Assembly: GCF_001194135.2 (NCBI RefSeq)
Contig: NC_069006.1
Coordinates: 389,351 to 427,900, forward strand
Source of the DNA: Octopus bimaculoides
Lineage: Eukaryota
Length of the DNA stretch: 38,550 bases
Direction of reading: 5' to 3'
In this document: piece after piece, positions 1,968-31,920 of the stretch
How the letters are laid out: each line of letters opens with the position of its first letter
Position numbering within the stretch: position 1 is the stretch's first letter
Program-made: the position numbers and the translations under genes
Notes under the pieces: model-generated
What the model was told of the DNA's origin: nothing
The model's input: the letters and a program-made list of their open reading frames with translations, nothing else
The model's database searches: none

Positions 1968-2039
1968 GCCTCCATAGCCCAGTGGTTAGCGTACTGCTTT
2001 TGTAAACCAGGGTCGTGAGTTCGATCCTCATTGACGGCT
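1968..2039 (+). pseudogene. tRNA-Thr(TGT)-derived sequence; degenerate, probably the head of a SINE (family D)
   Basis: GCCTCCATAGCCCAGTGGTTAGCGTACTGCTTTTGTAAACCAGGGTCGTGAGTTCGATCCTCATTGACGGCT has an A box, a B box (GAGTTCGATCC) and a TT-TGT-AA anticodon loop. Two acceptor-stem mismatches and one anticodon-stem mismatch argue against a functional tRNA. Confidence 0.8.
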
Positions 2040-5694: not shown

Positions 5695-5855
5695 TTTCCA
5701 TTATTCTTATGTTCTCCAAAACACGCTTCACTTCTCCTCCTCGGAATTAACACTCACGCAATGGTGATGACCAATTCCTCGGGTGCTTATGTGACATTCG
5801 GGGTTCCTGTAACTGTTCCTCTGGATCTTTCCTTGTAAACTGAACATATATATAT

Positions 5856-6146
5856 GGAAAACAAACTTCAACCAGCTATTCTGATATGTCTGTGCACACG
5901 TTTGAATGTGGTGTGTGCGTGCCAGAGGGCTTGCAAATCCAATTGGGGTCTTAGAAGACATGTTAGGATCTACAATGAGCAGAACTTACTTGCAGGTATT
6001 GGTAGTACAAATCAGAGGTGCAATCTATGTGGGTGTTTTTTCAAAATATTGTCTGGTTTAAAAAGCCACATCAGACGACATGAAAGGGCTAAGGTGTAGG
6101 TGCAGGAGGTGGTCAAACTCTGTGTAAGGAGTAGACAACCACCATG
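5856..6146 (+). pseudogene. Two-finger C2H2 coding remnant, probably the 3' end of an RTE-like LINE ORF2
   Basis: [21 protein letters not shown] precedes the stop at 6097-6099. Removing one duplicated GTGC gives FECGVCQRACKSNWGLRRHVRIY for finger 1. There is no TGEKP linker, and a short 3' segment runs into a microsatellite. Confidence 0.6.
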
Positions 6147-9040: not shown

Positions 9041-9270
9041 TAAGGCGGTTAGCTTAATAATAATTGTTAGCAGGTCGGGCAAAATAGCTGGCGTCATTTC
9101 GTTCGTCTTTACGTTCCAGGCTCGAATGCCGCAGGGGTCAACTTTGCTTTTCTTCCTTCTGGTGTCGAAAAAATAAGTACCAGTCTAGCACTACAGCCAA
9201 TACAATCGAGTTATCCCTCCACCGAAATTGCTAGCCTTGTACCTACATTTGAAACCATTATTATTATTAT
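9041..9270 (+). mobile_element. SINE family A copy with (ATT)n tail
   Basis: TAAGGCGG head, CTTTACGTTCC...GGTCAACTTTGC, ATAAGTACCAG, then GCCTTGT...TTTGAAACC(ATT)n. Confidence 0.8.
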
Positions 9271-9287
9271 TAGTAGTAGTAGTAGTA

Positions 9288-9848
9288 TCTTTGAACGAGA
9301 GAGCAATGCGTGCTATCAAAGTGACACTGGAGTAAAATATACGAAACCCAATATACCCATCATGACTACCCGTCTGACAAGGGTACACCAGGCACATGCA
9401 TCACAATCATATGTGCACGACATGGAAATCTCACATAAAGATAAACAGCACAGGATCTTACAGGTGGGGTCCAGTTAGAATTTTCTTCAGGACGAGTAGT
9501 CCAGTCCACTCAAATGGTCCCGGAATAAGATTTGTTTAAGGATGATGAATGAAATGCTCATGTTTCCGTGGTTGAATTATTCAAATCCCAAAGAATTCCT
9601 CTCAACACATGGCTATGATGCCCCCCTCCACTACTTCTGCTCTTGATCAGAGATGCACATATCATCATCCACAAAGGGACATGCTCAACTGGCTAAAGTC
9701 AAACAACTGACAAGTAAATATGCAGCATTGGGCAGAATATATGCTGTAGCAATCCTTTAAACCAAAAAAAATAATGTACATGACAACACTTTCAATCAGT
9801 TAAGATCAGGAGCCATGAGAGAAACTACTTAGTACTGCATTAGGGCAT
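9288..9848 (-). mobile_element. Non-LTR retroelement 3' region (family E); 5' boundary uncertain
   Basis: 9300-9412 is the reverse-complement homologue of 14273-14392, and both end at trinucleotide tails. I see no ORF. Confidence 0.6.
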
Positions 9849-9877
9849 GTTGTTGTTGTTGCTGTTATAATTATTAT

Positions 9878-10547
9878 TAAGACGGCGAGCTGGCAGAATC
9901 GTTAAAACGCCAGGCAAAATGCTTAGCGGTATTTCATTTGCCACTACATTCTGTGTTCAAATTCCACCGATGTTGACTTTGCCTTTCATCCTTTCGGAGT
10001 CAATAAATTAAGTACCAGTGAAACACAGGGGGTCGATGTAATCGATTAGTCCCCTCCCCCGAAATTTCAGGCCTTGTGACTATAGTGGAAAGGATTATTA
10101 TTGTTATTATTAAGGTGGCGATCTTGCTGAATCGTTACCATACAGGGCGAAGTGCTTAGCGTTATTTCGCCTGTCTTTACGTTCTGAGTTCAAGTTCCGC
10201 CGAGGTCGACTTTGCCTTTCATCCTTCATGGTCGATAAATTAAGTACCAGTGGAACATTGGAGTTGATGTAATCCACTAGTCCCCGCCCCACAAATTACA
10301 GGCCTTGTGTCTAAAGAAGAAAGGATTATTATTATTATTATTATTATTAAGGTGGTGAGCCGGCAGAGCCTTGAGTACGACGGGAAAGATACTTTGCTGC
10401 ATTACGACCATATTTGCCTTTCATCCTTTCGATGAAATAAGTAGCGTTTGAACACAGATTGATGTAATCAATTTATCCCCTCCCCCACAATTGATGCCCT
10501 TGTGGCAAAATTTGAAACCATTATTATTATTATTATTATTATTACTA
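9878..10547 (+). mobile_element. Head-to-tail array of three family A SINEs (9878-10110, 10111-10347, 10348-10547)
   Basis: Each copy starts TAAG(A/G)(C/T)GG, contains CTTTGCCTTTCATCCTT..TAAGTA and ends (ATT)n. The first two keep the GTTCAA B box; the third lacks that segment. Confidence 0.9.
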
Positions 10548-14218: not shown

Positions 14219-14272
14219 ATGGAATTTAAGGTGGAAGAATTTATTGAATTTCCCAGTGTGGAGCAATTGAGG
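14219..14272 (+). pseudogene. Truncated gag N-terminus (Gmr1/SCAN-type Gypsy-like)
   Basis: MEFKVEEFIEFPSVEQLR lies just downstream of the LTR and PBS and is cut off by the family E repeat. The family assignment is from remembered similarity. Confidence 0.55.
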
Positions 14273-14418
14273 ATATGGTTGTGATGCATGTGCCTGGTGT
14301 ACCCTTATCAGACGGGTAGTCACGATGAATATACTGGGCTTCGTATATTTTACCCCAGTGTCACTTCGACGGGGTGTGCTGCTCTCTCGCTCAATAATAA
14401 TAATAATAATAATAATAA
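14273..14418 (+). mobile_element. Family E 3' fragment with (AAT)n tail
   Basis: Homologous to 9300-9412 in the opposite orientation. Confidence 0.75.
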
Positions 14419-14623
14419 TCCTTTCTACAATAGGCACAAGGCCTGAAATTTATGGGGGGTGGGGTAAGTCGATGATATCGACCTCAGTACATGACTGGTA
14501 CCTAATTTATCGACCCCGAATGGATGAAAGGCAACGTCCACCTCGGTGGAATTTGAACGCAGAACGTAAAGATGGACGAAACGTCTCTAAGAATTTCGCC
14601 CGGCGGATGCTGCCAGCTCACTG
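14396..14623 (-). mobile_element. SINE family A copy
   Basis: (AAT)n-CCTTTCTAC..CACAAGGCCTGAAATT..CTGGTACC..GATGAAAGGC..ATTTGAACGCAGAACGTAAAG, the reverse complement of family A. Confidence 0.85.
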
Positions 14624-15783
14624 CATCAGTAGTAATAATAACAATAATAATAATATGAAGAAGAAGATGAAGACAGGAATGGTGATGAAGAACCACGGGA
14701 ATAACTAGAAGAAAATAAAAGAGAAAGTAGAAGAAAAGGAATTCTGAGAATTAATGTAAAAGAGATATTGAAGTTAGAAAGCAATGAAAAGTATTCTAAC
14801 AACAACAACACGAAGAACAACAAGAAGAGAGTGTGTCGGTTTCGACAAGAATTGGAATATAAAACGCACTGGAGTGAATAAAAGCATTTTGAATGTGTTT
14901 TGGTACGGAAGGAATTCAGTAGAGTTTTACAACGCCAACATTTGTCTCCTGCCAAAAACCTTTGACAAGTTCTAACTAATCAGACCTCGTCGCTTAAGCT
15001 CCGTTGGCTTCTGTCCAGGAAGAAAGAAAGAAAAAAAAATAGACATATATATACGAGAGAAAAATAGACAGACAACAAGATAGAGAAAAGGAGAGAGAGA
15101 TAGAAAATCTGGCCTTTGCTACGATGCCGAAATCGGACTTTAAGAGATGAACTTTTGCTCTAACAAAGAGCTGCCGCCACCATCCGCCTCGCTGTTTTGT
15201 GGTATGATTTGTATAAGCAGAAAGAAGAGGTTTTGTGTTTTTTTTTTTTTCAGTTGCATAAATAAAGCAAAGTGAAATATATTTATATGTATTTATACAT
15301 GGACTACGCTATTCACACACACACACACATACGTGTGTGTGTGTGTGGGCCCGTGTGTATGCATATAAATCAACGCGGCCACAATAATATATGTATGTAA
15401 GTATGTATGTATGTATATGAACTTTTACAGGCGTGTGTGTGTATATGTATATAAATATATATACACCGACATAATCATTAATACACATGTATAAGCATGC
15501 TTTTCTAGTCTTTGCGTGTGTCTGTGGGTATATATACGCCAAAACACACTTCTTAAAGCACCACCATCACTAAATGCTAAATCAAATTTAAATGTTTCCA
15601 CACACGTGACACGGAACCCTAAAATCTGCCGCTATTTCCAACGTGAGAGATTATTTCGTTCATCTTTCAAGGGACTCGACGTACTATGAAAAGCTTGTCT
15701 CTTAACCACCACCACCAACAACAACAACAACACAACCAGATTGACCTACTAACGGAAGAAAATGGATCAGATGCTAACGTATT

Positions 15784-16571: not shown

Positions 16572-16989
16572 TAAGGCGGCGAGCTGGCAGAAACGTTAGC
16601 ACGCCGGGCGAAATGCTTAGCGGTCTGCCATTACGTTCTGAGTTCAAATTCCGCCGAGGTCGACTTTGCTTTTTATCCTTTCGGGGTCGATAAATTAAGT
16701 ACCACTTACGCACTGGGGTCGATATAATCGACTTAATCCCTTTGCCTGTCCTTGTTTGTCCCCTCTATATTTAGCCCCTTGTGGGCAATAAAGAAATAAG
16801 AAGCGTTAGCACGCCGAGCGAAATGCTTAGCATTATTTCGTCTGTCGCCACGTTCTGAGTTCAAATTCCGCCGAGGTCAACTTTGCCTTTCATCGTCGAT
16901 TAAATTAGTACCAGTTACGTACTGGGTCGATCTAATCGACTTAATCCCTTCTCCCCAAATCTGAGGCCTTGTGCTTCCAGTAGAAAAGC

Positions 16990-17024
<35 letters not shown>

Positions 17025-20090: not shown

Positions 20091-20108
20091 CACATAAACA
20101 TACATACA

Positions 20109-20696
20109 AACTGGTGGGAACACAAACCACCTTCCAGTGCTTGAAAATGATCACATCTCACTCCTCTGGAACTTCACTGTTCAAACTGACAGAAAGATAG
20201 TTACAAATAGGCCAGACATTATATTGAAAGATTTCAGACAAAAATCATGCCTCCTCATTGATATGACTGTCCCAATCAACATAAATGTATCTCTCAAGAC
20301 CTACCAAAAACTGAGCAAGTATAAAGATCTTGAAATAGAAATTGGCAAAACGTGGAACCTCAAGACTAAAACAAAGCCTGATGTCATAGGTGCCCTAAGA
20401 ATGATTGCTACGTAACTCAGATACCAGGAAACCCCAAAATGACAGAAATTCAAAAAATACTGTTAATGGGAACTGCCCAAATCCTACGTAAAATACTGTC
20501 TATGTAATCTCAAATTTTAAAACAAACTCATAATTTTCTTATGGTTTCTTAAACGTTCTCTAGAACAATACTATGGCACCTTAGGCATAACACCAGCATG
20601 AACTTCTAATTTGGTGTCTCTCGAGGTCTCTGGGTGAGATTTGAAGTCAACTTGTACAAGTACAAAGCAAAAGTCAAACATAATAATAATAATAAT
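20109..20696 (+). mobile_element. 5'-truncated non-LTR retrotransposon with a restriction-like endonuclease C-terminus (R4/Dong-like) and (TAA)n tail
   Basis: NWWEHKPP/VLENDHISLLWNFTVQTDRKIVTNRPDIILKDFRQKSCLLIDMTVP...KLSKYKDLEIEIGKTWNLKT carries the RPDI..D..K..KY REL motif. It is frameshifted; the final stop is at 20505-20507, followed by a 3' UTR. Confidence 0.85.
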
Positions 20697-20840
20697 CCTT
20701 TCTACTATAGACACAAGGCCTGAATTTGAGGGGAGGGGACTAGTCGATTACATCGACTCCAGTGTTCAACTGGTACTTATTTTATAGACACCGAAATGAG
20801 TGAAAGGCAAAGACGACCTCGGTAGAATGTGAACTCATAT
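20681..20840 (-). mobile_element. SINE family A 3' half
   Basis: (AAT)nCCTTTCTACTATAGACACAAGGCCTGAA..CTGGTACTTATTT..TGAAAGGCAAAGACGACCTCGG. Confidence 0.85.
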
Positions 20841-24849: not shown

Positions 24850-25385
24850 GAGTCTAAATTCTGCTCATGTCAGCTTTGCCTTTCATTCTTTCAAGATCGA
24901 TAAAATAAAATACCAGTCAAGTACTGGGGTCAATGCAAATGACTAACTCCCTTCCCCAAATTTCAGGCCTTGTGCTCATATTAGAAAGACTTAGTTAAGG
25001 TGGCGGCTTGGCAGAATCGTTAGAACGCCGGACAATAATCGGCATTTCTTGAGCTTTACGTTCTGAGTTCAAATTCCGCCGAGATAGACTTGGCTTTTCA
25101 TCATTTCGAGGTCGACAAGACCCGTTCCCGAAAATTTTCAGACCTTGTAGTAAGAATTTTTGTTATGGCATTGAGCTGGTAGAATCTTTAGGGCAGGGGA
25201 CAAAATGCTTAGTAGCATTTCTCCCGACTGTTTATTTTCTAAGTTCACATCCCACCAAGGTCAACTTTGGGGTCAATAAAATAAAGTACCAGTCAAGTAC
25301 TGCGGTCGATGTAATCAACTGACTTCCTCCTCTCCTTAAAATTGCTGGCCTTGTGCTATAGTTTGAGGCATTTGTTGTTGATAAT
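24850..25385 (+). mobile_element. Head-to-tail cluster of three family A SINEs
   Basis: Family A blocks recur at about 24850-24990, 24997-25150 and 25165-25385. Confidence 0.8.
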
Positions 25386-26129
25386 GATGGTAGTAGTGGT
25401 GGTGGTGGTGGTAGAAACATTTTATTTCTGTTTCACTATAATAATAACAGTGATGTGTTGTACTAATAATAAATTAACACAAACTTCCTTTTTACACCAA
25501 GCCTGCATTCTAAACAGAGGTCGTTAATCTGGCAACTTTCCTTTTCTCCTACTTAAATCTTGTGATTTTCTTGTCGTAAAAGTGTAGAACCTGAAATGCT
25601 AGATTCTCTTCGTTTTCTTTCTTTTATTTGCTGAGTTTATTTTCTTCGTATACACCTTCTGTTCATTCGTATTGATTCGTTTTTCTCTTCTACGATTCTT
25701 TCTGCCACATTTTACTTTTCTACATTCCTCTGCTATTTGTACATCTCATCCTTAGGTCTTAACCTCAGTTATGTTATTTGTAATATATATATATATTGTA
25801 GGCCAAAAGTCACGTACAAAATATGTTTAATACGCCACGGATTTGTGAAAGAGAGGCTTCAATTTTCTTAAAACGCATAAATCAAATAGAATAATGAATA
25901 CACCCGTACCTGTACAAGATGGAACAAAATGAATGATAATAATAACGTAATGTAAATAAAATGTCAAATGTTTTGGTGAGTCACTTTTGGTCCACTCTGC
26001 ATTATATNNNNNNNNNNNNNNNNNNNNNNNNNNNNNNNNNNNNNNNNNNNNNNNNNNNNNNNNNNNNNNNNNNNNNNNNNNNNNNNNNNNNNNNNNNNNN
26101 NNNNNNNNNNNNNNNNNNNNNNNNNNNNN

Positions 26130-26179
<50 letters not shown>

Positions 26180-26289
26180 GCAGGCGTACGCACTAACATG
26201 TATACACAAGCACGCAGACAAGAGTCTTCCATACCTGCACGCTGTGGTGATTTTGGTATATGGAAACTATATGGAAGCATGTCGAATAT

Positions 26290-26692
26290 ATATGTAATAC
26301 AAAATTAATATAAACAGCAGGTTGCAATGTTTCACCAAAAGGAAGAATTATAATTGTCTTAAATGCAACGAGGGTGTTTAAAAAAACACCTAGATTGCTA
26401 GAGATAAGAGCTAAAACGCTCTAATGCATGGTGTATATGGTTTAAGCTGGCTTAACTGATGAGGCAACGGAAATTGCCGAAACTGACATCAGTCTTAAGA
26501 ATTCTCAGTCGGCATTTTTCGGACAATTATGGTCCCTGTTAGTGTATATGTTTTCATTCATGTGCGTTAACTACAACATTAGTGCATTTTAGCTCTTATT
26601 TCTAGCGATGCAGGTGTTTTTTTTTAACACCATAGTCACATTTAGTGATCATTAAAATTCTCCTGCTGTTTATATTAATTTTGTGTATACAC
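26290..26692. repeat. Long interrupted inverted repeat enclosing hammerhead unit 1
   Basis: 26299-26320 is the exact reverse complement of 26663-26684. 26373-26426 approximately matches the reverse complement of 26577-26631. Confidence 0.85.
26451..26499 (+). ncRNA. Type I hammerhead ribozyme with an intact canonical core
   Basis: CTTAA-CTGATGA-GGCAA-CGGAAA-TTGCC-GAA-ACTG-ACAT-CAGT-C-TTAAG: all three stems pair; GUC cleavage is predicted after 26494. Confidence 0.9.
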
Positions 26693-26764
26693 ATTATCGA
26701 ATCGCTAAATCATCCATTAATTTGAGTGACGGAAGCATAATACTAATAGAGAATACTCAGCTGG

Positions 26765-26813
26765 CCTAACAGATGAGGCAACGGAAGCTGCCGAAACTGA
26801 TGTCAGTCTTAGG
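26765..26813 (+). ncRNA. Second type I hammerhead copy with a U4>A core mutation
   Basis: CCTAA-CAGATGA-GGCAAC-GGAA-GCTGCC-GAA-ACTG-ATGT-CAGT-C-TTAGG; part of a 102-bp direct repeat (26445-26546 and 26759-26860). Confidence 0.85.
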
Positions 26814-27189
26814 AATTCTCGGTCGGCATTTATCAGACAGTTATGGTCCCTGCCAGTGTACGAAGTCTGATCAGTAAGTATCCGGACTAAAGCACGCAGG
26901 GTAAATTCGCTTGGCGTAGATTGACTTTGACCTCTGCTGTGCATGCACCACTAAGTCTTAATGCCATAGCTCCATTCTGCTGTTTACAGCATTGCTTGGA
27001 AGGAAGGTGTGTAGCGTGTAATCGTCGCATTGACCATGACAGNNNNNNNNNNNNNNNNNNNNNNNNNNNNNNNNNNNNNNNNNNNNNNNNNNNNNNNNNN
27101 NNNNNNNNNNNNNNNNNNNNNNNNNNNNNNNNNNNNNNNNNNTATATATATATATATATATTGTTATTATTATTTAGAATTTTTAATAT

Positions 27190-27445
27190 TTTTTTTGAGT
27201 GGTTGGTGTAACACGGCGCTTTGTTTAACACTTTGATTTGGTGCAGCCTCAATCAGACACTTGTAGTTTTAATCCCATCAACAAACACACCGCCATATTT
27301 AACTTCTTTGAGTGGTAGGTTTAAAGAGGTGCTTTAACTCCACGTGTTTGTATAGCCTCCACTGGACACTTGTTTTAACCGCAATAATACACCAGTTTAT
27401 TTAAATCCTTCGTGTGGTAGGTCTAACACGGCGCTTTGTTTAAAA
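27190..27445. repeat. Degenerate tandem repeat with a ~105-113 bp unit
   Basis: (T/C)G(A/T)GTGGT starts at about 27196, 27309 and 27411; AACACGGCGCTTTGTTTAA is exact at 27210 and 27425. Confidence 0.7.
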
Positions 27446-28379
27446 GAACGATTCTCTCCTCCGTCTATGCTCAGATAAGTCAACCACTTTCAGTATCGCC
27501 ATTCCGGAGAGTAGGAAGACCAGCTGACAAAAGGTCATGAAGAATGTCCCTCGTCTATGACCCAATATTAGTACCTGAAACGCTAAGCCACGTGTGCCTT
27601 TTCATTTGGTTAGCGGTGCCCTCTCTAAGTTTTTTTTTCTCTTTAGTCAGGAGTGAAGGCAGTATTCATGACCCGCCACAGGGCCTCTCAGACTGGTGGG
27701 AAGGAGAAAGGTGTCCTCAACTCGGAAACCTGGGCCGCTTGCAACAGAATGAAGTGCACTAAACTTAAAGTGTAAAGTAGTGGTGGGAAAATTTGACCTC
27801 GATCGAAATTGAACTCAGAACGTATAGTGTCAGAACAAAATAACGTATGACTTTCTGTCCGCTGCTTAAACAACTGCGCCGTGTTGTCTCTAACGCCTTT
27901 ACGCGCGAAAGGGGGAAAGTAGTGGCTTTACTGAGAAAGGTGGAACAGAGAAAATGGAATATTATATATATATATATATAGATAGGTAAGAAGATTGATA
28001 GAGTGGTGGTATTGGCGGTGGCTTATAGCACAATGGATCTATCTTCGCGGTGTTTTATCATTTTATGTAGTGTTGTGGCGGAAGTTCAGGGAAAATACTG
28101 CATGAAACATATTTCTACTACTACTACTACTACCAGTACTACTACTACTATCAGATACTCGACAGCCTAAATGCTAAAACGCAGCATTCATTTATGCTGA
28201 CACACACTTTCACCATTACCACTATCAATATCAGAGTACCTGCTACTCACACGCCACCTATCGGTGTTACCAACATACACCCACATATACACTTTACAGG
28301 ACGGGTACCAAAGTATACGGCGCCATTACGCACGGAGAAGGTAATCATCTACAAAAGACACACACACAGACAAAACAAC

Positions 28380-28421
<42 letters not shown>

Positions 28422-28952
28422 TGTGTAAATAACAGAGTGTAATGGAGAAAGAAAGAGTGTGAGAGAGTAAGAGAAAGAGGGTGAAAGAGTTAGTAGTCAG
28501 CCTACAATAAGACGAACGAAAGAGAAATAGAAAGTGAAAGAGAGGAGAACGAGGAAGGAAAGAAGGGATAACGTGAGTAAGATAGGAGAGGTGGAAAGAA
28601 GTTAAAGTTCTATAATAATACAGCGGGGGGGGGGGATCAGAGAGGTAATGAGGAAGAGTGAGTGAAAGAATAAGACAAGAATGAAAGAGTTAAACAGAGG
28701 GGATTGAAAGACGTTGAGATGTGGAGGTAGATTTTGATAGAGATAAAAAGACGAAGGAAGTTTATAGATACACACAACGCACATATAAACATACATGTTG
28801 CATATTCATTATATCATAACCTTGATACTGGCTGCTGGTAATTATAGTGTTAAACACTTTCGGTATGCAAATTAGGGACTCCTTCATAGATTAACTGCTG
28901 CATTTATTGAGTATATAAACAGTTTGGTTGATTATTTCTCTGGATACTGTCA

Positions 28953-29020
28953 GAATGATGTGGACGCCCCTGATGAGAACCCAATAAGGTTCGAAAATCG
29001 ATTAAAGTTATTCATCATTC
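28953..29020 (+). ncRNA. Hammerhead-like motif with degenerate stem I, in a possible Penelope-like terminal repeat
   Basis: CTGATGA-GAACC-CAATAA-GGTTC-GAA-AATCGATT-A. Distal GAATGATG/CATCATTC pairs, but the proximal stem I does not. Confidence 0.55.
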
Positions 29021-29139
29021 TTTTCAGTCTGCGGAGAAATAGGTAAAATTTGCCCTGTTTATAATGATACCATATTACATATATATTACAGAAGGAGAGG
29101 GAGGGAGGGAGAGAGAGAGAGAGAGATAATTCTGAGTAG

Positions 29140-29300
29140 AGCGGTTAGTGACTGGTATTGTACTTCTACCGAATACCAATAGACGAAAAGACAACAAATG
29201 ACCTTGACAGGATATGTATACAGCACGTAAAGAGCAAGGGCAAGTACCACAAAACATTTTGCCCGACACACTAACGAATCTCCCAATCCACTGACCTTAC
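29140..29300 (-). mobile_element. Old SINE family A-like copy
   Basis: Reverse complement TAAGGTCAG..TCGTTAGTGTGTCGGGCAAAATGTTTTGTGGTAC..CTTTACGTGCTG resembles the family A head. Confidence 0.5.
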
Positions 29301-29555
29301 GAAAAGAAATAATGAAATATGTGACTGAGTCAATGAAAATAATGAAGTATAGTGAATGGAAAAAAGTGAAAGGAATAAGAATAACTGAAGGAAGACGATA
29401 CGAAATACCAGAAGAAAACAGAGCAAATAAGCTTCAAATAAAAATCATTAAGAATCACTGAAAGTTTCATTTTTGTAATTGGTTTGCGAGATTCTAAATG
29501 TGTATTCGTGTGCTGAAATGTATCTTGTTGATGGATCTCCGGAGTGTCATTATAT

Positions 29556-31669: not shown

Positions 31670-31920
31670 CCCTGTACAAATATCACTGCTAAGCACCTTT
31701 CCGATGCATGAAGATTCCGATAGTTCGTTCATCAACGCTAATGATAACAATAATAACAAACAATACTAATAGTTTCAGCTTTCGGCACAAAATCGGCAAT
31801 TTTAGAAGTGACCGGTCGAGTACATCAACCTCAGTACTTGATTAGTAATTTATTTTATCAATCCCAAAAGAATGAAAGACAAGTCCGGCCTCAGCGGGAT
31901 TCGAACTCAGAGCGTAAAGG
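31156..31920 (-). mobile_element. Cluster of three minus-strand family A SINEs; the first two carry an internal inversion
   Basis: Copies at about 31156-31412, 31448-31615 and 31745-31920. A plus-oriented B-box segment lies at 31272-31344 and 31545-31615. Confidence 0.7.

What the first reader, a model, noticed from the sequence alone, without database searches (positions are those of the whole stretch)
26445..26860. Tandem pair of type I hammerhead ribozymes 314 nt apart: a retrozyme-like unit that could release a small circular RNA
Seen: two 102-bp direct repeats each fold into a complete type I HHR. Copy 1 has a perfect CUGAUGA/GAAA core and a GUC site. Stem I shows a compensatory change (CTTAA/TTAAG vs CCTAA/TTAGG). 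The stem III loops ACAT and ATGT are the two CpG-decay products of ACGT, so the ancestor was probably the 12-nt palindrome ACTGACGTCAGT. Established: palindromic stem III segments and tandem type I HHRs typify Penelope-like terminal repeats and metazoan non-LTR retrozymes, whose transcripts self-cleave into monomers that circularise. Inference: cleavage at 26494 and 26808 would give a 314-nt monomer. Copy 2 carries U4>A, so this locus may be decayed while the family is active elsewhere.
Basis: partly seen in the sequence, partly recalled or inferred. Interest (0 to 1): 0.92.

Follow-up and report, generated by a model that had tools for sequence, protein, structure and literature searches.

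The report
Decayed hammerhead-ribozyme retroelement repeat
Two copies of a 102-bp repeat, each carrying a hammerhead self-cleaving RNA motif (one intact-looking, one with a mutated core), sit 314 bp apart in a repeat-rich animal-type genome; this looks like an old, non-coding relic of the known Penelope-like/retrozyme class of mobile elements, not a new kind of system.

Summary
The sequence facts are correct. A 102-bp direct repeat (26445-26546 and 26759-26860, 87% identical) carries a type I hammerhead (HHR) in each copy. Copy 1 has the full CUGAUGA/GAAA core, three helices and a GUC site. Copy 2 has U4>A and a shortened helix II. A motif of this quality is not expected by chance (0 hits in 400 simulated windows).

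The "tandem retrozyme that releases a 314-nt circle" reading is only partly supported:
- Only 102 of the 314 bp are duplicated (1.32 units), and TRF reports no tandem repeat.
- Rfam gives no hammerhead hit at gathering score.
- The active fold of copy 1 (-8.4 kcal/mol) loses to a competing fold that buries the core (-14.3).
- The two copies show no sign of constraint on the ribozyme.
- No other family copy could be retrieved, so conservation and covariation remain untested.

Only one arm lies inside the proposed monomer.

Direct HHR repeats, an adjacent inverted copy, a 35-bp spacer and AT-rich flanks fit the complex insertions described for Penelope-like elements and their non-autonomous retrozyme derivatives. 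I find no RT/GIY-YIG ORF nearby. Verdict: a real but ordinary, probably decayed, member of a known class.

The parts
26445..26546 (+). H1: first copy of the 102-bp hammerhead-bearing repeat unit
   Evidence: Direct-repeat family D2; alignment; BLAST 87.3% over 102 bp, E 4e-31.
26451..26499 (+). Hammerhead 1, type I, with intact consensus core. Helix I 26451-55/26495-99; CUGAUGA 26456-62; helix II 26463-67/26474-78; GAAA 26479-82; helix III 26482-85/26490-93 with loop ACAT; predicted cleavage 3' of C26494.
   Evidence: Descriptor match with helices of 5, 5 and 4 bp. All 13 modelled pairs are standard. Weak Rfam hits: RAGATH-1-hammerhead 16.3 bits over the whole topology and Hammerhead_3 17.5 bits partial.
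26759..26860 (+). H2: second copy of the 102-bp unit
   Evidence: Kimura two-parameter (K2P) distance to H1 is 0.144.
26765..26813 (+). Hammerhead 2, degenerate. Core is CAGAUGA (U4>A at 26771); helix II has 4 bp; helix I CCTAA/TTAGG; loop III ATGT; nominal cleavage site 3' of C26808.
   Evidence: Found only when position 4 of the descriptor is relaxed; alignment.
26264..26426 (.). Left arm of a long inverted repeat flanking H1
   Evidence: Local alignment with the reverse complement of 26577-26723, with a 22-nt indel; I1 and I15; BLAST. Hairpin 26285-26700 has MFE -154.9 kcal/mol, z = -12.9.
26577..26723 (.). Right arm of the inverted repeat. It lies inside the proposed 314-nt monomer.
26431..26443 (+). 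Left copy of a 13-bp direct repeat (GTGTATATGGTTT) bracketing H1. It could be a target-site duplication or a template-switch junction.
   Evidence: D5. 12 of 13 positions match. About 1.2% of random window positions do as well.
26542..26554 (+). Right copy of the 13-bp direct repeat (GTGTATATGTTTT). Its first 5 nt (GTGTA) are also the last 5 nt of H2.
26724..26758 (+). 35-bp unique spacer between the right inverted-repeat arm and H2. Its length matches the 30-40-bp 'tail' described for PLE insertions.
   Evidence: Defined by the boundaries. The comparison with PMC8557442 is by length only.
26130..26178 (.). (TA)n tract next to an assembly gap. It bounds the ~860-bp block on the left.
27143..27161 (.). 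(TA)n tract next to an assembly gap. It bounds the block on the right.

Best explanation
The locus is an old, non-coding insertion of a hammerhead-bearing retroelement of the Penelope-like (PLE) / non-LTR retrozyme class.

Its layout is:
- an inverted partial copy (26264-26426);
- then a direct copy that starts with the hammerhead unit H1 and continues through the matching arm (26445-26723);
- then a 35-bp spacer;
- then a second hammerhead unit, H2 (26759-26860), which plays the part of a pseudo-LTR.

Shown:
- the repeat and the hammerhead motif;
- the inverted repeat;
- the absence of an RT/endonuclease ORF in the ORF fragments tested and in all six frames of the 2.3 kb downstream (27143-29400);
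- 13-14% divergence between copies, with excess CpG decay;
- the U4>A change in H2.

Inferred:
- The element was copied in trans by a PLE reverse transcriptase. That enzyme nicks AT-rich DNA and can prime on both strands, which naturally yields inverted plus partial-tandem copies.
- When such units are transcribed as multimers, the hammerheads cut them into monomers with 5'-OH and 2',3'-cyclic phosphate ends, which a tRNA ligase circularises.

At this particular locus I think that pathway is mostly dead. H1 could still self-cleave after 26494, but weakly, because a competing helix (ACUGAUG with CAUCAGU) buries the core. H2 cannot act on its own.

The only route to a 314-nt product is a double hammerhead. 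There the H1 and H2 helix III segments form a perfect 12-bp duplex (ACAT and ATGT are reverse complements), and the intact H1 core is presented with the H2 site at 26808.
For: - Motif and repeat.
- Chance excluded: 0 of 400 simulated windows. The core plus helix II signature occurs only 3 times in the window, all on the + strand within 2.5 kb.
- Inverted repeat flanking H1.
- No RT or GIY-YIG: Pfam on 10 ORF fragments and on six frames of 27143-29400. No informative ORF of 120 aa or more in the window.
- Neutral decay: 7 differences in the 49 hammerhead positions against 6 in the other 53; 11 transitions and 2 transversions; K2P distance 0.144.
- Double-hammerhead geometry: the 12-bp helix III is fully Watson-Crick, and helix I of the H1 core with the H2 site has a single G.U.
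- Literature fit:
  - PLE insertions form partial tandems (pLTRs carrying HHRs), often with an adjacent inverted 5'-truncated copy, a 30-40-bp tail and a microsatellite/AT-rich bias (PMC8557442).
  - PLE protein cuts AT-rich DNA and extends both strands (PMC11167929).
  - Metazoan type I HHRs have short helix III segments with palindromic loops and can act as dimers (PMC4209133).
  - Non-LTR retrozymes of 170-400 nt give circRNAs (PMC7229834) and derive from PLE pLTRs (bioRxiv 10.64898/2026.07.22.740005).
Against: - No second family member could be found anywhere. There is none in the window by BLAST or by a covariance model run with filters off, and none in the metagenome, viral or prokaryote collections beyond chance 17-mers. 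So 'mobile multicopy family' is inferred, not shown.
- Rfam hammerhead models do not reach threshold.
- The inverted copy lacks the hammerhead unit. The simplest PLE scheme, an inverted 5'-truncated copy that keeps its 3' end, predicts otherwise unless the 3' end of the unit is at 26723.
- The 13-bp direct repeat bracketing H1 is better explained by a separate insertion of H1.
- The flanking (TA)n tracts are weak evidence, because the window is full of microsatellites.
- No PLE coding remnant was found in the ORF fragments or in the 2.3 kb tested.
Confidence: 0.62

Rival explanations
1. The ~100-bp hammerhead unit is itself the mobile module. H1 is a separate, later insertion into the apical loop of a pre-existing foldback (inverted-repeat) element, and H2 is another copy nearby. 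On this view the 314-bp spacing is incidental and there is no 314-nt monomer.
For: - A 13-bp direct repeat (12 of 13 identical) brackets H1 exactly, like a target-site duplication. Its first 5 nt overlap the unit's own 3' end, as expected for microhomology priming.
- Removing H1 and one repeat copy leaves a hairpin with a ~39-nt loop (reading).
- H1 and H2 share sharp boundaries (AGCTGG...GTGTA), but their flanks are unrelated or inverted.
- Retrozyme consensus lengths down to 51-98 bp are reported (bioRxiv 10.64898/2026.07.22.740005).
Against: - The bracket repeat is low-complexity, and about 1.2% of random positions in this microsatellite-rich window reach the same match.
- H2 has no recognisable target-site duplication.
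- The unit boundaries do not coincide with the ribozyme cleavage site, so the unit is not a retroposed self-cleaved monomer.
- Two independent same-strand insertions 314 bp apart need either a very abundant family or targeting.
Confidence: 0.2
2. One reading: an active or recently active retrozyme dimer whose transcript self-cleaves at 26494 and 26808 and yields a 314-nt circular RNA from this locus.
For: - Two hammerheads on the same strand at a spacing inside the known 170-400-nt range (PMC7229834).
- The monomer is 35.7% GC.
- The circular fold of 26495-26808 is more stable than shuffled controls: -72.1 kcal/mol, z = -2.8, 1 of 200 shuffles.
- An H1:H2 double hammerhead with a perfect 12-bp helix III would let the intact core cut the second site.
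Against: - H2 has U4>A in the invariant core. Established mutagenesis (Ruffner et al. 1990, from my own knowledge) shows that core changes other than at U7 cost orders of magnitude in rate.
- The locus fails the published operational test of a TRF tandem with at least 2 consecutive complete HHRs (preprint methods).
- Active folds lie 17-23 kcal/mol above the minimum free energy of the 416-nt transcript and 6 kcal/mol above it for the isolated H1.
- Only 60% of the monomer is paired, and its main complementary partner lies outside it.
- Divergence of 13% with CpG decay, and no constraint on the ribozyme.
Confidence: 0.1
3. The functional unit is the long hairpin (26264-26723), for example a source of hairpin-derived small RNAs. 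The hammerhead sequence in its loop would then be incidental.
For: - A very stable ~400-nt hairpin, z = -12.9.
- The only Rfam match over the region is a long-hairpin miRNA precursor model, MIR8562, at 31.7 bits.
Against: - The MIR8562 score is far below that family's gathering score of 211 and reflects hairpin shape only.
- The arms are 74-90% identical with a 22-nt indel, so they are decaying.
- No conservation or expression data are available.
- It does not explain H2.
Confidence: 0.05
4. A chance resemblance: an ordinary local duplication that happens to look like a hammerhead.
For: - Rfam hammerhead models do not call it.
- There are only two sequences, so covariation is not significant.
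Against: - 0 of 400 simulated windows contain even a relaxed match.
- All 11 invariant core positions, G10.1-C11.1, A15.1-U16.1, a GUC site and three perfect helices occur together.
- The near-palindromic helix III is typical of metazoan type I HHRs (PMC4209133).
Confidence: 0.03

Closest known systems
Metazoan non-LTR retrozymes (Cervera & de la Pena 2020, PMC7229834)
   Same: - Type I hammerhead.
- Non-coding, AT-rich (36% GC).
- Unit spacing of 314 bp, within the 170-400 nt range.
- No LTR, PBS or PPT.
- Helix III segment able to support dimeric (double-hammerhead) action, as described for amphibian retrozymes.
   Different: - Only 1.32 units, with just the 102-bp hammerhead part duplicated, and no TRF-detectable tandem array.
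- The second ribozyme has a mutated core.
- A large inverted repeat straddles the first ribozyme.
- Family copy number and circRNA expression are unknown.
Penelope-like elements: pseudo-LTRs with hammerheads and complex tandem/inverted insertions (PMC4209133, PMC8557442, PMC11167929)
   Same: - Hammerheads sit in short direct terminal repeats.
- There is an adjacent inverted partial copy.
- A ~35-bp spacer has the length of the PLE 'tail'.
- The flanks are AT-rich, (TA)n.
   Different: - No RT/GIY-YIG ORF between the repeats or, as far as tested, nearby (ORF fragments and all six frames of 27143-29400).
- The repeats are 314 bp apart, not ~3 kb.
- Helix III is a real 4-bp stem with a tetraloop rather than the 'minimal' PLE hammerhead.
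- The inverted copy lacks the hammerhead unit.
Classical satellite/SINE hammerheads (newt satellite 2, Schistosoma Sm-alpha, cave-cricket pDo500); Rfam RF00163
   Same: - Type I topology.
- Weak or short helix III, implying dimer-dependent cleavage.
- Carried by short non-coding repeats.
   Different: - No sequence similarity detectable through the Rfam models (best clan hit 17.5 bits).
- Not in a long tandem satellite array here.
Plant LTR retrozymes (PMC4918200)
   Same: Two same-strand hammerheads in direct repeats bracket a non-coding segment that could be excised as a circle.
   Different: Plant elements use type III hammerheads in ~350-bp LTRs, have PBS/PPT and 4-bp TSDs, and give 600-1000-nt circles. 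None of these features is present here.

Membership tests
Hammerhead ribozyme, type I | Invariant core C3 U4 G5 A6 N7 G8 A9 ... G12 A13 A14, the A15.1-U16.1 pair, and H17 at the cleavage site | tested here: met
   H1 has CUGAUGA, GAAA, A26482-U26493 and C26494. H2 does not meet it: its core is CAGAUGA, with U4>A at 26771.
Hammerhead ribozyme, type I | Three helices around the core, with helix I open and helices II and III closed by loops | tested here: met
   Helices of 5, 5 and 4 bp in H1 and 5, 4 and 4 bp in H2. All 26 pair cells are standard pairs, against 15-42% when the partners are slid.
Hammerhead ribozyme, type I | Match to the curated covariance models (Rfam clan CL00010) at gathering score | tested here: not met
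   No hit in the whole window at gathering score and none at E<=10 in 731 nt. The best is 17.5 bits (Hammerhead_3, partial; gathering 48.5) in a 71-nt search. Published PLE and retrozyme hammerheads were found with descriptors rather than these models, so this lowers the claim but does not refute it.
Hammerhead ribozyme, type I | Covariation supporting the helices across family members | tested here: inconclusive
   Two sequences only. There is one compensatory pair in helix I, and 247 of 500 shuffles reach the same score.
Hammerhead ribozyme, type I | Mg2+-dependent self-cleavage at H17 | not testable with these tools
   In silico only. The active fold is -8.4 kcal/mol against a competing minimum free energy fold of -14.3 for H1.
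Metazoan non-LTR retrozyme | Tandem repeat of 150-450-bp units, each with a type I hammerhead. The operational test is a TRF-detectable array with at least 2 consecutive complete HHRs. | tested here: not met
   TRF reports nothing in 26179-27042. Only 102 of the 314 bp are duplicated. The second HHR core is incomplete.
Metazoan non-LTR retrozyme | Multicopy family dispersed in the genome | not testable with these tools
   No further copy in the 38.5-kb window. The source genome is not available. The public collections searched gave nothing relevant.
Metazoan non-LTR retrozyme | Non-coding, under 50% GC, and lacking LTR, PBS and PPT | tested here: met
   35.7% GC. Only short spurious ORFs. I looked for no primer-binding or polypurine motifs beyond reading the sequence.
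Metazoan non-LTR retrozyme | Monomer predicted to form a stable, highly self-paired circular RNA | tested here: inconclusive
   Circular minimum free energy -72.1 kcal/mol, z = -2.8, 60% paired. The strongest complementarity of its 26577-26723 segment is to 26264-26426, outside the monomer.
Metazoan non-LTR retrozyme | Expression as linear and circular RNA of unit length | not testable with these tools
   No transcriptome data are available.
Penelope-like element (autonomous) | Single ORF with a telomerase-like RT and a GIY-YIG endonuclease between the pLTRs | tested here: not met
   314 bp between the repeats. Pfam is negative for 10 ORF fragments and for all six frames of 27143-29400.
Penelope-like element (insertion signature, autonomous or not) | Partial tandem giving HHR-bearing pLTRs, plus an adjacent inverted 5'-truncated copy | tested here: inconclusive
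   Direct HHR repeats and an adjacent inverted copy are present. However, the inverted copy contains no hammerhead unit, and the order of the parts fits the published scheme only if the 3' end of the unit is at 26723.
Penelope-like element (insertion signature, autonomous or not) | A 30-40-bp 'tail' and an AT-rich or microsatellite target | tested here: inconclusive
   A 35-bp unique spacer at 26724-26758, and (TA)n tracts plus gaps on both sides. Microsatellites are everywhere in this window, so the flanks carry little weight.

The most novel reading that the evidence does not exclude
The two CpG-decay products of the ancestral ACGT loop (ACAT in H1, ATGT in H2) are exact reverse complements. 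The two helix III segments can therefore form a perfect 12-bp intermolecular-type helix within one transcript.

In that double hammerhead the single intact core (H1) would cut the site of the core-dead copy (26808). H1 in its monomeric fold would cut its own site (26494). If so, a locus with only one working ribozyme would still release a 314-nt RNA.

More broadly, 'dead' hammerhead copies in retrozyme or PLE arrays could remain usable as substrates. A related possibility is that the ~100-nt hammerhead unit is an independently mobile module that targets hairpin loops.
Probability: 0.07. Interest if true: 0.5.

Novelty: new member of a known kind. Interest (0 to 1): 0.25.

Why it matters
If the family is active elsewhere in this genome, it adds one more lineage to the catalogue of animal hammerhead retroelements that make abundant small circular RNAs. 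The locus would also be a clean natural example of the PLE-style 'inverted plus partial tandem' insertion in a very short non-autonomous element, which bears on how retrozymes derive from PLE terminal repeats. On its own, this decayed locus does not open a new question. Its practical use is as a seed for a genome-wide family search.

Tried and rejected
1. Rfam at gathering score over the whole window gave only a tRNA. E-value mode over 731 nt gave only a sub-threshold long-hairpin miRNA model. A 71-nt search gave only weak partial hammerhead hits.

2. A type III reading, suggested by the Hammerhead_3 alignment that uses the hairpin TTAAGC-TG-GCTTAA as a closed helix I, was rejected. Position 16.1 would be G, and no helix III can be formed with the upstream sequence (reading).

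3. Family copies were not obtainable:
   - Two metagenome scans with core and helix III patterns gave 0 hits.
   - A viral-contig scan gave 2 hits and a prokaryote-genome scan gave 120 hits to a 17-mer. That number is what chance predicts for 596 Gb, so I did not pursue them.
   - A search of protein space with the open +1 frame shared by both copies found no candidate.
   - Exact-protein look-ups of two window ORFs to identify the source found nothing on record.

4. A covariance model built from H1 and H2, run over the window with filters off, found only the two copies themselves.

5. A search for a PLE RT/GIY-YIG remnant was negative.

6. Sensitive BLAST found no reverse-complement copy of the hammerhead unit to the left of the inverted arm, as the simplest PLE scheme predicts.

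7. No convincing target-site duplication was found for H2 or for the whole 26264-26860 block (reading).

8. The third hammerhead-like core at 28970 is not the 3' partner of a PLE. It has a different sequence, lacks a proximal helix I, and there is no ORF between it and H2.

9. Host identity: the composition and repeats look like an invertebrate, possibly a cephalopod. I could not verify this, so it is not used in the argument.
Full report
**What is there**

The window is a gap-ridden (15 runs of N), microsatellite-rich eukaryotic assembly of 37% GC. It carries many copies of a SINE-like repeat.

At the reported coordinates there is a 102-bp direct repeat: H1 at 26445-26546 and H2 at 26759-26860. 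The copies are 87% identical and 314 bp apart start to start.

Read by hand and with a descriptor of my own, H1 contains a complete type I hammerhead at 26451-26499:
- helix I CUUAA/UUAAG;
- C3-A9 = CUGAUGA;
- helix II GGCAA/UUGCC, closed by CGGAAA and starting with the usual G10.1-C11.1 pair;
- G12-A14 plus A15.1 = GAAA;
- helix III ACUG/CAGU, closed by ACAU;
- a GUC triplet with C17 at 26494.

H2 has the same layout at 26765-26813 with three departures. Its core reads CAGAUGA (U4>A at 26771). One helix II pair is lost (A-U becomes A.C). Helix I reads CCUAA/UUAGG, which is a double, pair-preserving change. Cleavage after 26494 and 26808 would indeed give 314 nt.

**Is it more than chance?**

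Yes.
- A relaxed descriptor (helices of at least 4, 3 and 3 bp) found nothing in 400 second-order Markov simulations of the window on both strands.
- My back-of-envelope estimate for the strict version is about 1e-5 per window.
- A very loose scan for core plus helix II finds only three sites in the window, all on the + strand within 2.5 kb: H1, H2 and a third motif at 28970.

The usual database support is missing, however.
- Rfam gives no hammerhead at gathering score.
- It gives none at E<=10 in a 731-nt search.
- It gives only 17.5 bits (Hammerhead_3, partial) and 16.3 bits (RAGATH-1-hammerhead, full type I topology) in a 71-nt search.

Hammerheads of Penelope-like elements and retrozymes were found in the literature with structural descriptors, not with these models (PMC4209133, PMC8557442). 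I therefore read the Rfam result as a caution, not a refutation.

**Does the pair show constraint on the ribozyme?**

No.
- The 13 differences split 7 in the 49 hammerhead positions and 6 in the other 53.
- One of the 13 core positions is hit, where about 1.6 would be expected under neutrality.
- The single compensatory pair is not significant with two sequences: 247 of 500 shuffles reach it, and my estimate is p about 0.1, because two transitions at a U-A pair always give C-G.
- Four of the 13 differences are CpG<->TpG/CpA changes. That is 4 of 12 CpG site-copies against 9 of about 180 other site-copies.
- The window as a whole is only mildly CpG-depleted (observed/expected 0.82).
- The copies differ by a Kimura two-parameter (K2P) distance of 0.144, so the duplication is old.

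**Predicted folding**

- For the isolated H1, the hammerhead fold evaluates to -8.4 kcal/mol. The minimum-energy fold is -14.3 and pairs the core ACUGAUG with CAUCAGU, the loop plus 3' strand of helix III. The inferred ancestor behaves the same way.
- For the 416-nt transcript covering both copies, the minimum free energy is -114.1 kcal/mol. Forcing the H1 hammerhead gives -96.8, and forcing a double hammerhead gives -91.1.
- Nearest-neighbour models ignore tertiary contacts. Weak helix III hammerheads are known to be poor self-cleavers as monomers and to act as dimers (PMC4209133, PMC7229834). One PLE hammerhead cleaved only in the presence of its protein (PMC11167929). Weak or conditional activity is therefore the expectation.

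The H1 and H2 helix III segments can therefore form a perfect 12-bp duplex. By the topology of a double hammerhead (Forster et al. 1988, cited in PMC4209133; the strand assignment is my inference), the intact H1 core would face the H2 site at 26808, with helix I CUUAA/UUAGG containing one G.U. The mutant H2 core would face 26494, across a helix I with a C.A mismatch. This is the only plausible way the locus could still release a 314-nt RNA. I give it a low probability.

**Surroundings**

Most of the remaining 212 bp (26577-26723) is the right arm of a long inverted repeat. Its left arm (26264-26426) lies upstream of H1, outside the proposed monomer.

RNA from 26285-26700 would form a ~400-nt hairpin with H1 at its tip (-154.9 kcal/mol, z = -12.9). 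The proposed circular monomer folds only moderately better than shuffles (z = -2.8, 60% paired).

Other features of the block:
- H1 is bracketed by a 13-bp direct repeat, GTGTATATGGTTT / GTGTATATGTTTT. The first five bases of the right-hand copy are also the last five of H2. In this microsatellite-rich window a bracket this good arises at about 1.2% of random positions.
- A 35-bp unique spacer separates the right arm from H2.
- The whole ~860-bp block lies between (TA)n tracts that abut assembly gaps.
- There is no reverse-transcriptase or GIY-YIG signal in ORF fragments around the locus or in six-frame translations of 27143-29400. No informative long ORF exists in the window.

**Interpretation**

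The combination matches the 'complex tandem/inverted' insertions described for Penelope-like elements (PMC8557442): short direct repeats carrying type I hammerheads, an adjacent inverted partial copy, a tail-sized spacer, AT-rich flanks and no coding capacity. It also fits the finding that a PLE protein nicks AT-rich DNA and extends both strands (PMC11167929). That activity would naturally produce a head-to-head inverted copy next to a direct one.

Animal non-LTR retrozymes are now argued to be non-autonomous derivatives of PLE terminal repeats (bioRxiv 10.64898/2026.07.22.740005). 'PLE-derived' and 'retrozyme-like' are therefore the same hypothesis at this resolution.

My best explanation (confidence about 0.6) is that this is an old, decayed, non-autonomous member of that class. 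The main rival (about 0.2) is that the ~100-bp hammerhead unit moved on its own and that H1 inserted, with a target-site duplication, into the loop of a pre-existing foldback. In that case the 314-nt 'monomer' is an accident of spacing. The two cannot be separated without other family copies.

**What could not be done**

The decisive evidence is conservation and covariation across genomic copies, tandem organisation elsewhere, and expression. All of it needs the source genome and transcriptome, which these tools do not reach.
- Pattern scans of the metagenome, viral and prokaryote collections gave nothing beyond chance matches.
- A protein-space search using the open frame shared by both copies gave nothing.
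- Exact-protein look-ups to identify the source found nothing.
- A covariance model built from H1 and H2 found no further copy in the window.

**Comparison and verdict**

- As a hammerhead, H1 meets the sequence and helix definition, and H2 fails at U4.
- As a retrozyme in the published operational sense (a TRF tandem with two consecutive complete hammerheads), the locus fails.
- As an autonomous PLE it fails, because it has no ORF.
- It resembles both in how it would work. The PLE insertion signature is present but imperfect.

This is a new member of a known kind. It is not a new mechanism, and at this locus it is probably not functional. Interest 0.25.

Noticed in passing
window 28953-29020 (+), core at 28970-29004: A third hammerhead-like motif lies 2.2 kb downstream on the same strand: CTGATGA, a 5-bp helix II (GAACC/GGTTC), GAAA and an 8-nt palindrome AATCGATT in place of helix III. 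There is no helix I next to the core, only a distal 8-bp helix GAATGATG/CATCATTC. It is probably a decayed hammerhead of a different family. On the minus strand the same stretch gives weak C/D-box snoRNA-like hits (snoZ105, 19 bits, E 0.23).
   Followed up: partly
window 26264-26426 and 26577-26723: A long inverted repeat (74-90% identical, with a 22-nt indel) would make a ~400-nt RNA hairpin with hammerhead 1 at its tip (z = -12.9). It might be a foldback element or a source of small RNAs in its own right.
   Followed up: partly
window 14271-14710 and at least 12 related stretches (e.g. 9076-9412, 9863-10112, 10145-10349, 16602-16735, 16812-17015, 20680-20837, 24876-24988, 31815-31919): A dispersed SINE-like repeat, 71-83% identical between copies and on both strands, is associated with (TAA)n tracts. 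It dominates the window's interspersed repeats.
   Followed up: partly
window 1968-2039 (+): A tRNA-Thr (anticodon TGT) is called by both Rfam (36.6 bits) and ARAGORN. It sits between (GA)n and (TA)n microsatellites and could be a gene or the head of a tRNA-derived SINE.
   Followed up: no
window 5839-6096 (+): A stop-free fragment with a C2H2 zinc finger (Pfam zf-C2H2, E 1.9e-5, just at the curated cut-off). It could be an exon or a transposon ORF remnant.
   Followed up: no
window 20098-20412 (+): A 105-aa stop-free fragment that, from memory, resembles the C-terminal region of invertebrate non-LTR retrotransposon ORF2 proteins. It has no Pfam hit.
   Followed up: no
window 27284-27335 and 27386-27437: A 52-nt direct repeat, 73% identical, 102 bp apart, just downstream of the gap that follows H2. 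It is unrelated in sequence to the hammerhead unit.
   Followed up: no
window 26008-26129 and 27043-27142: Assembly gaps abutting (TA)n tracts lie on both sides of the hammerhead block. Further copies of the unit could be hidden in unassembled sequence.
   Followed up: no
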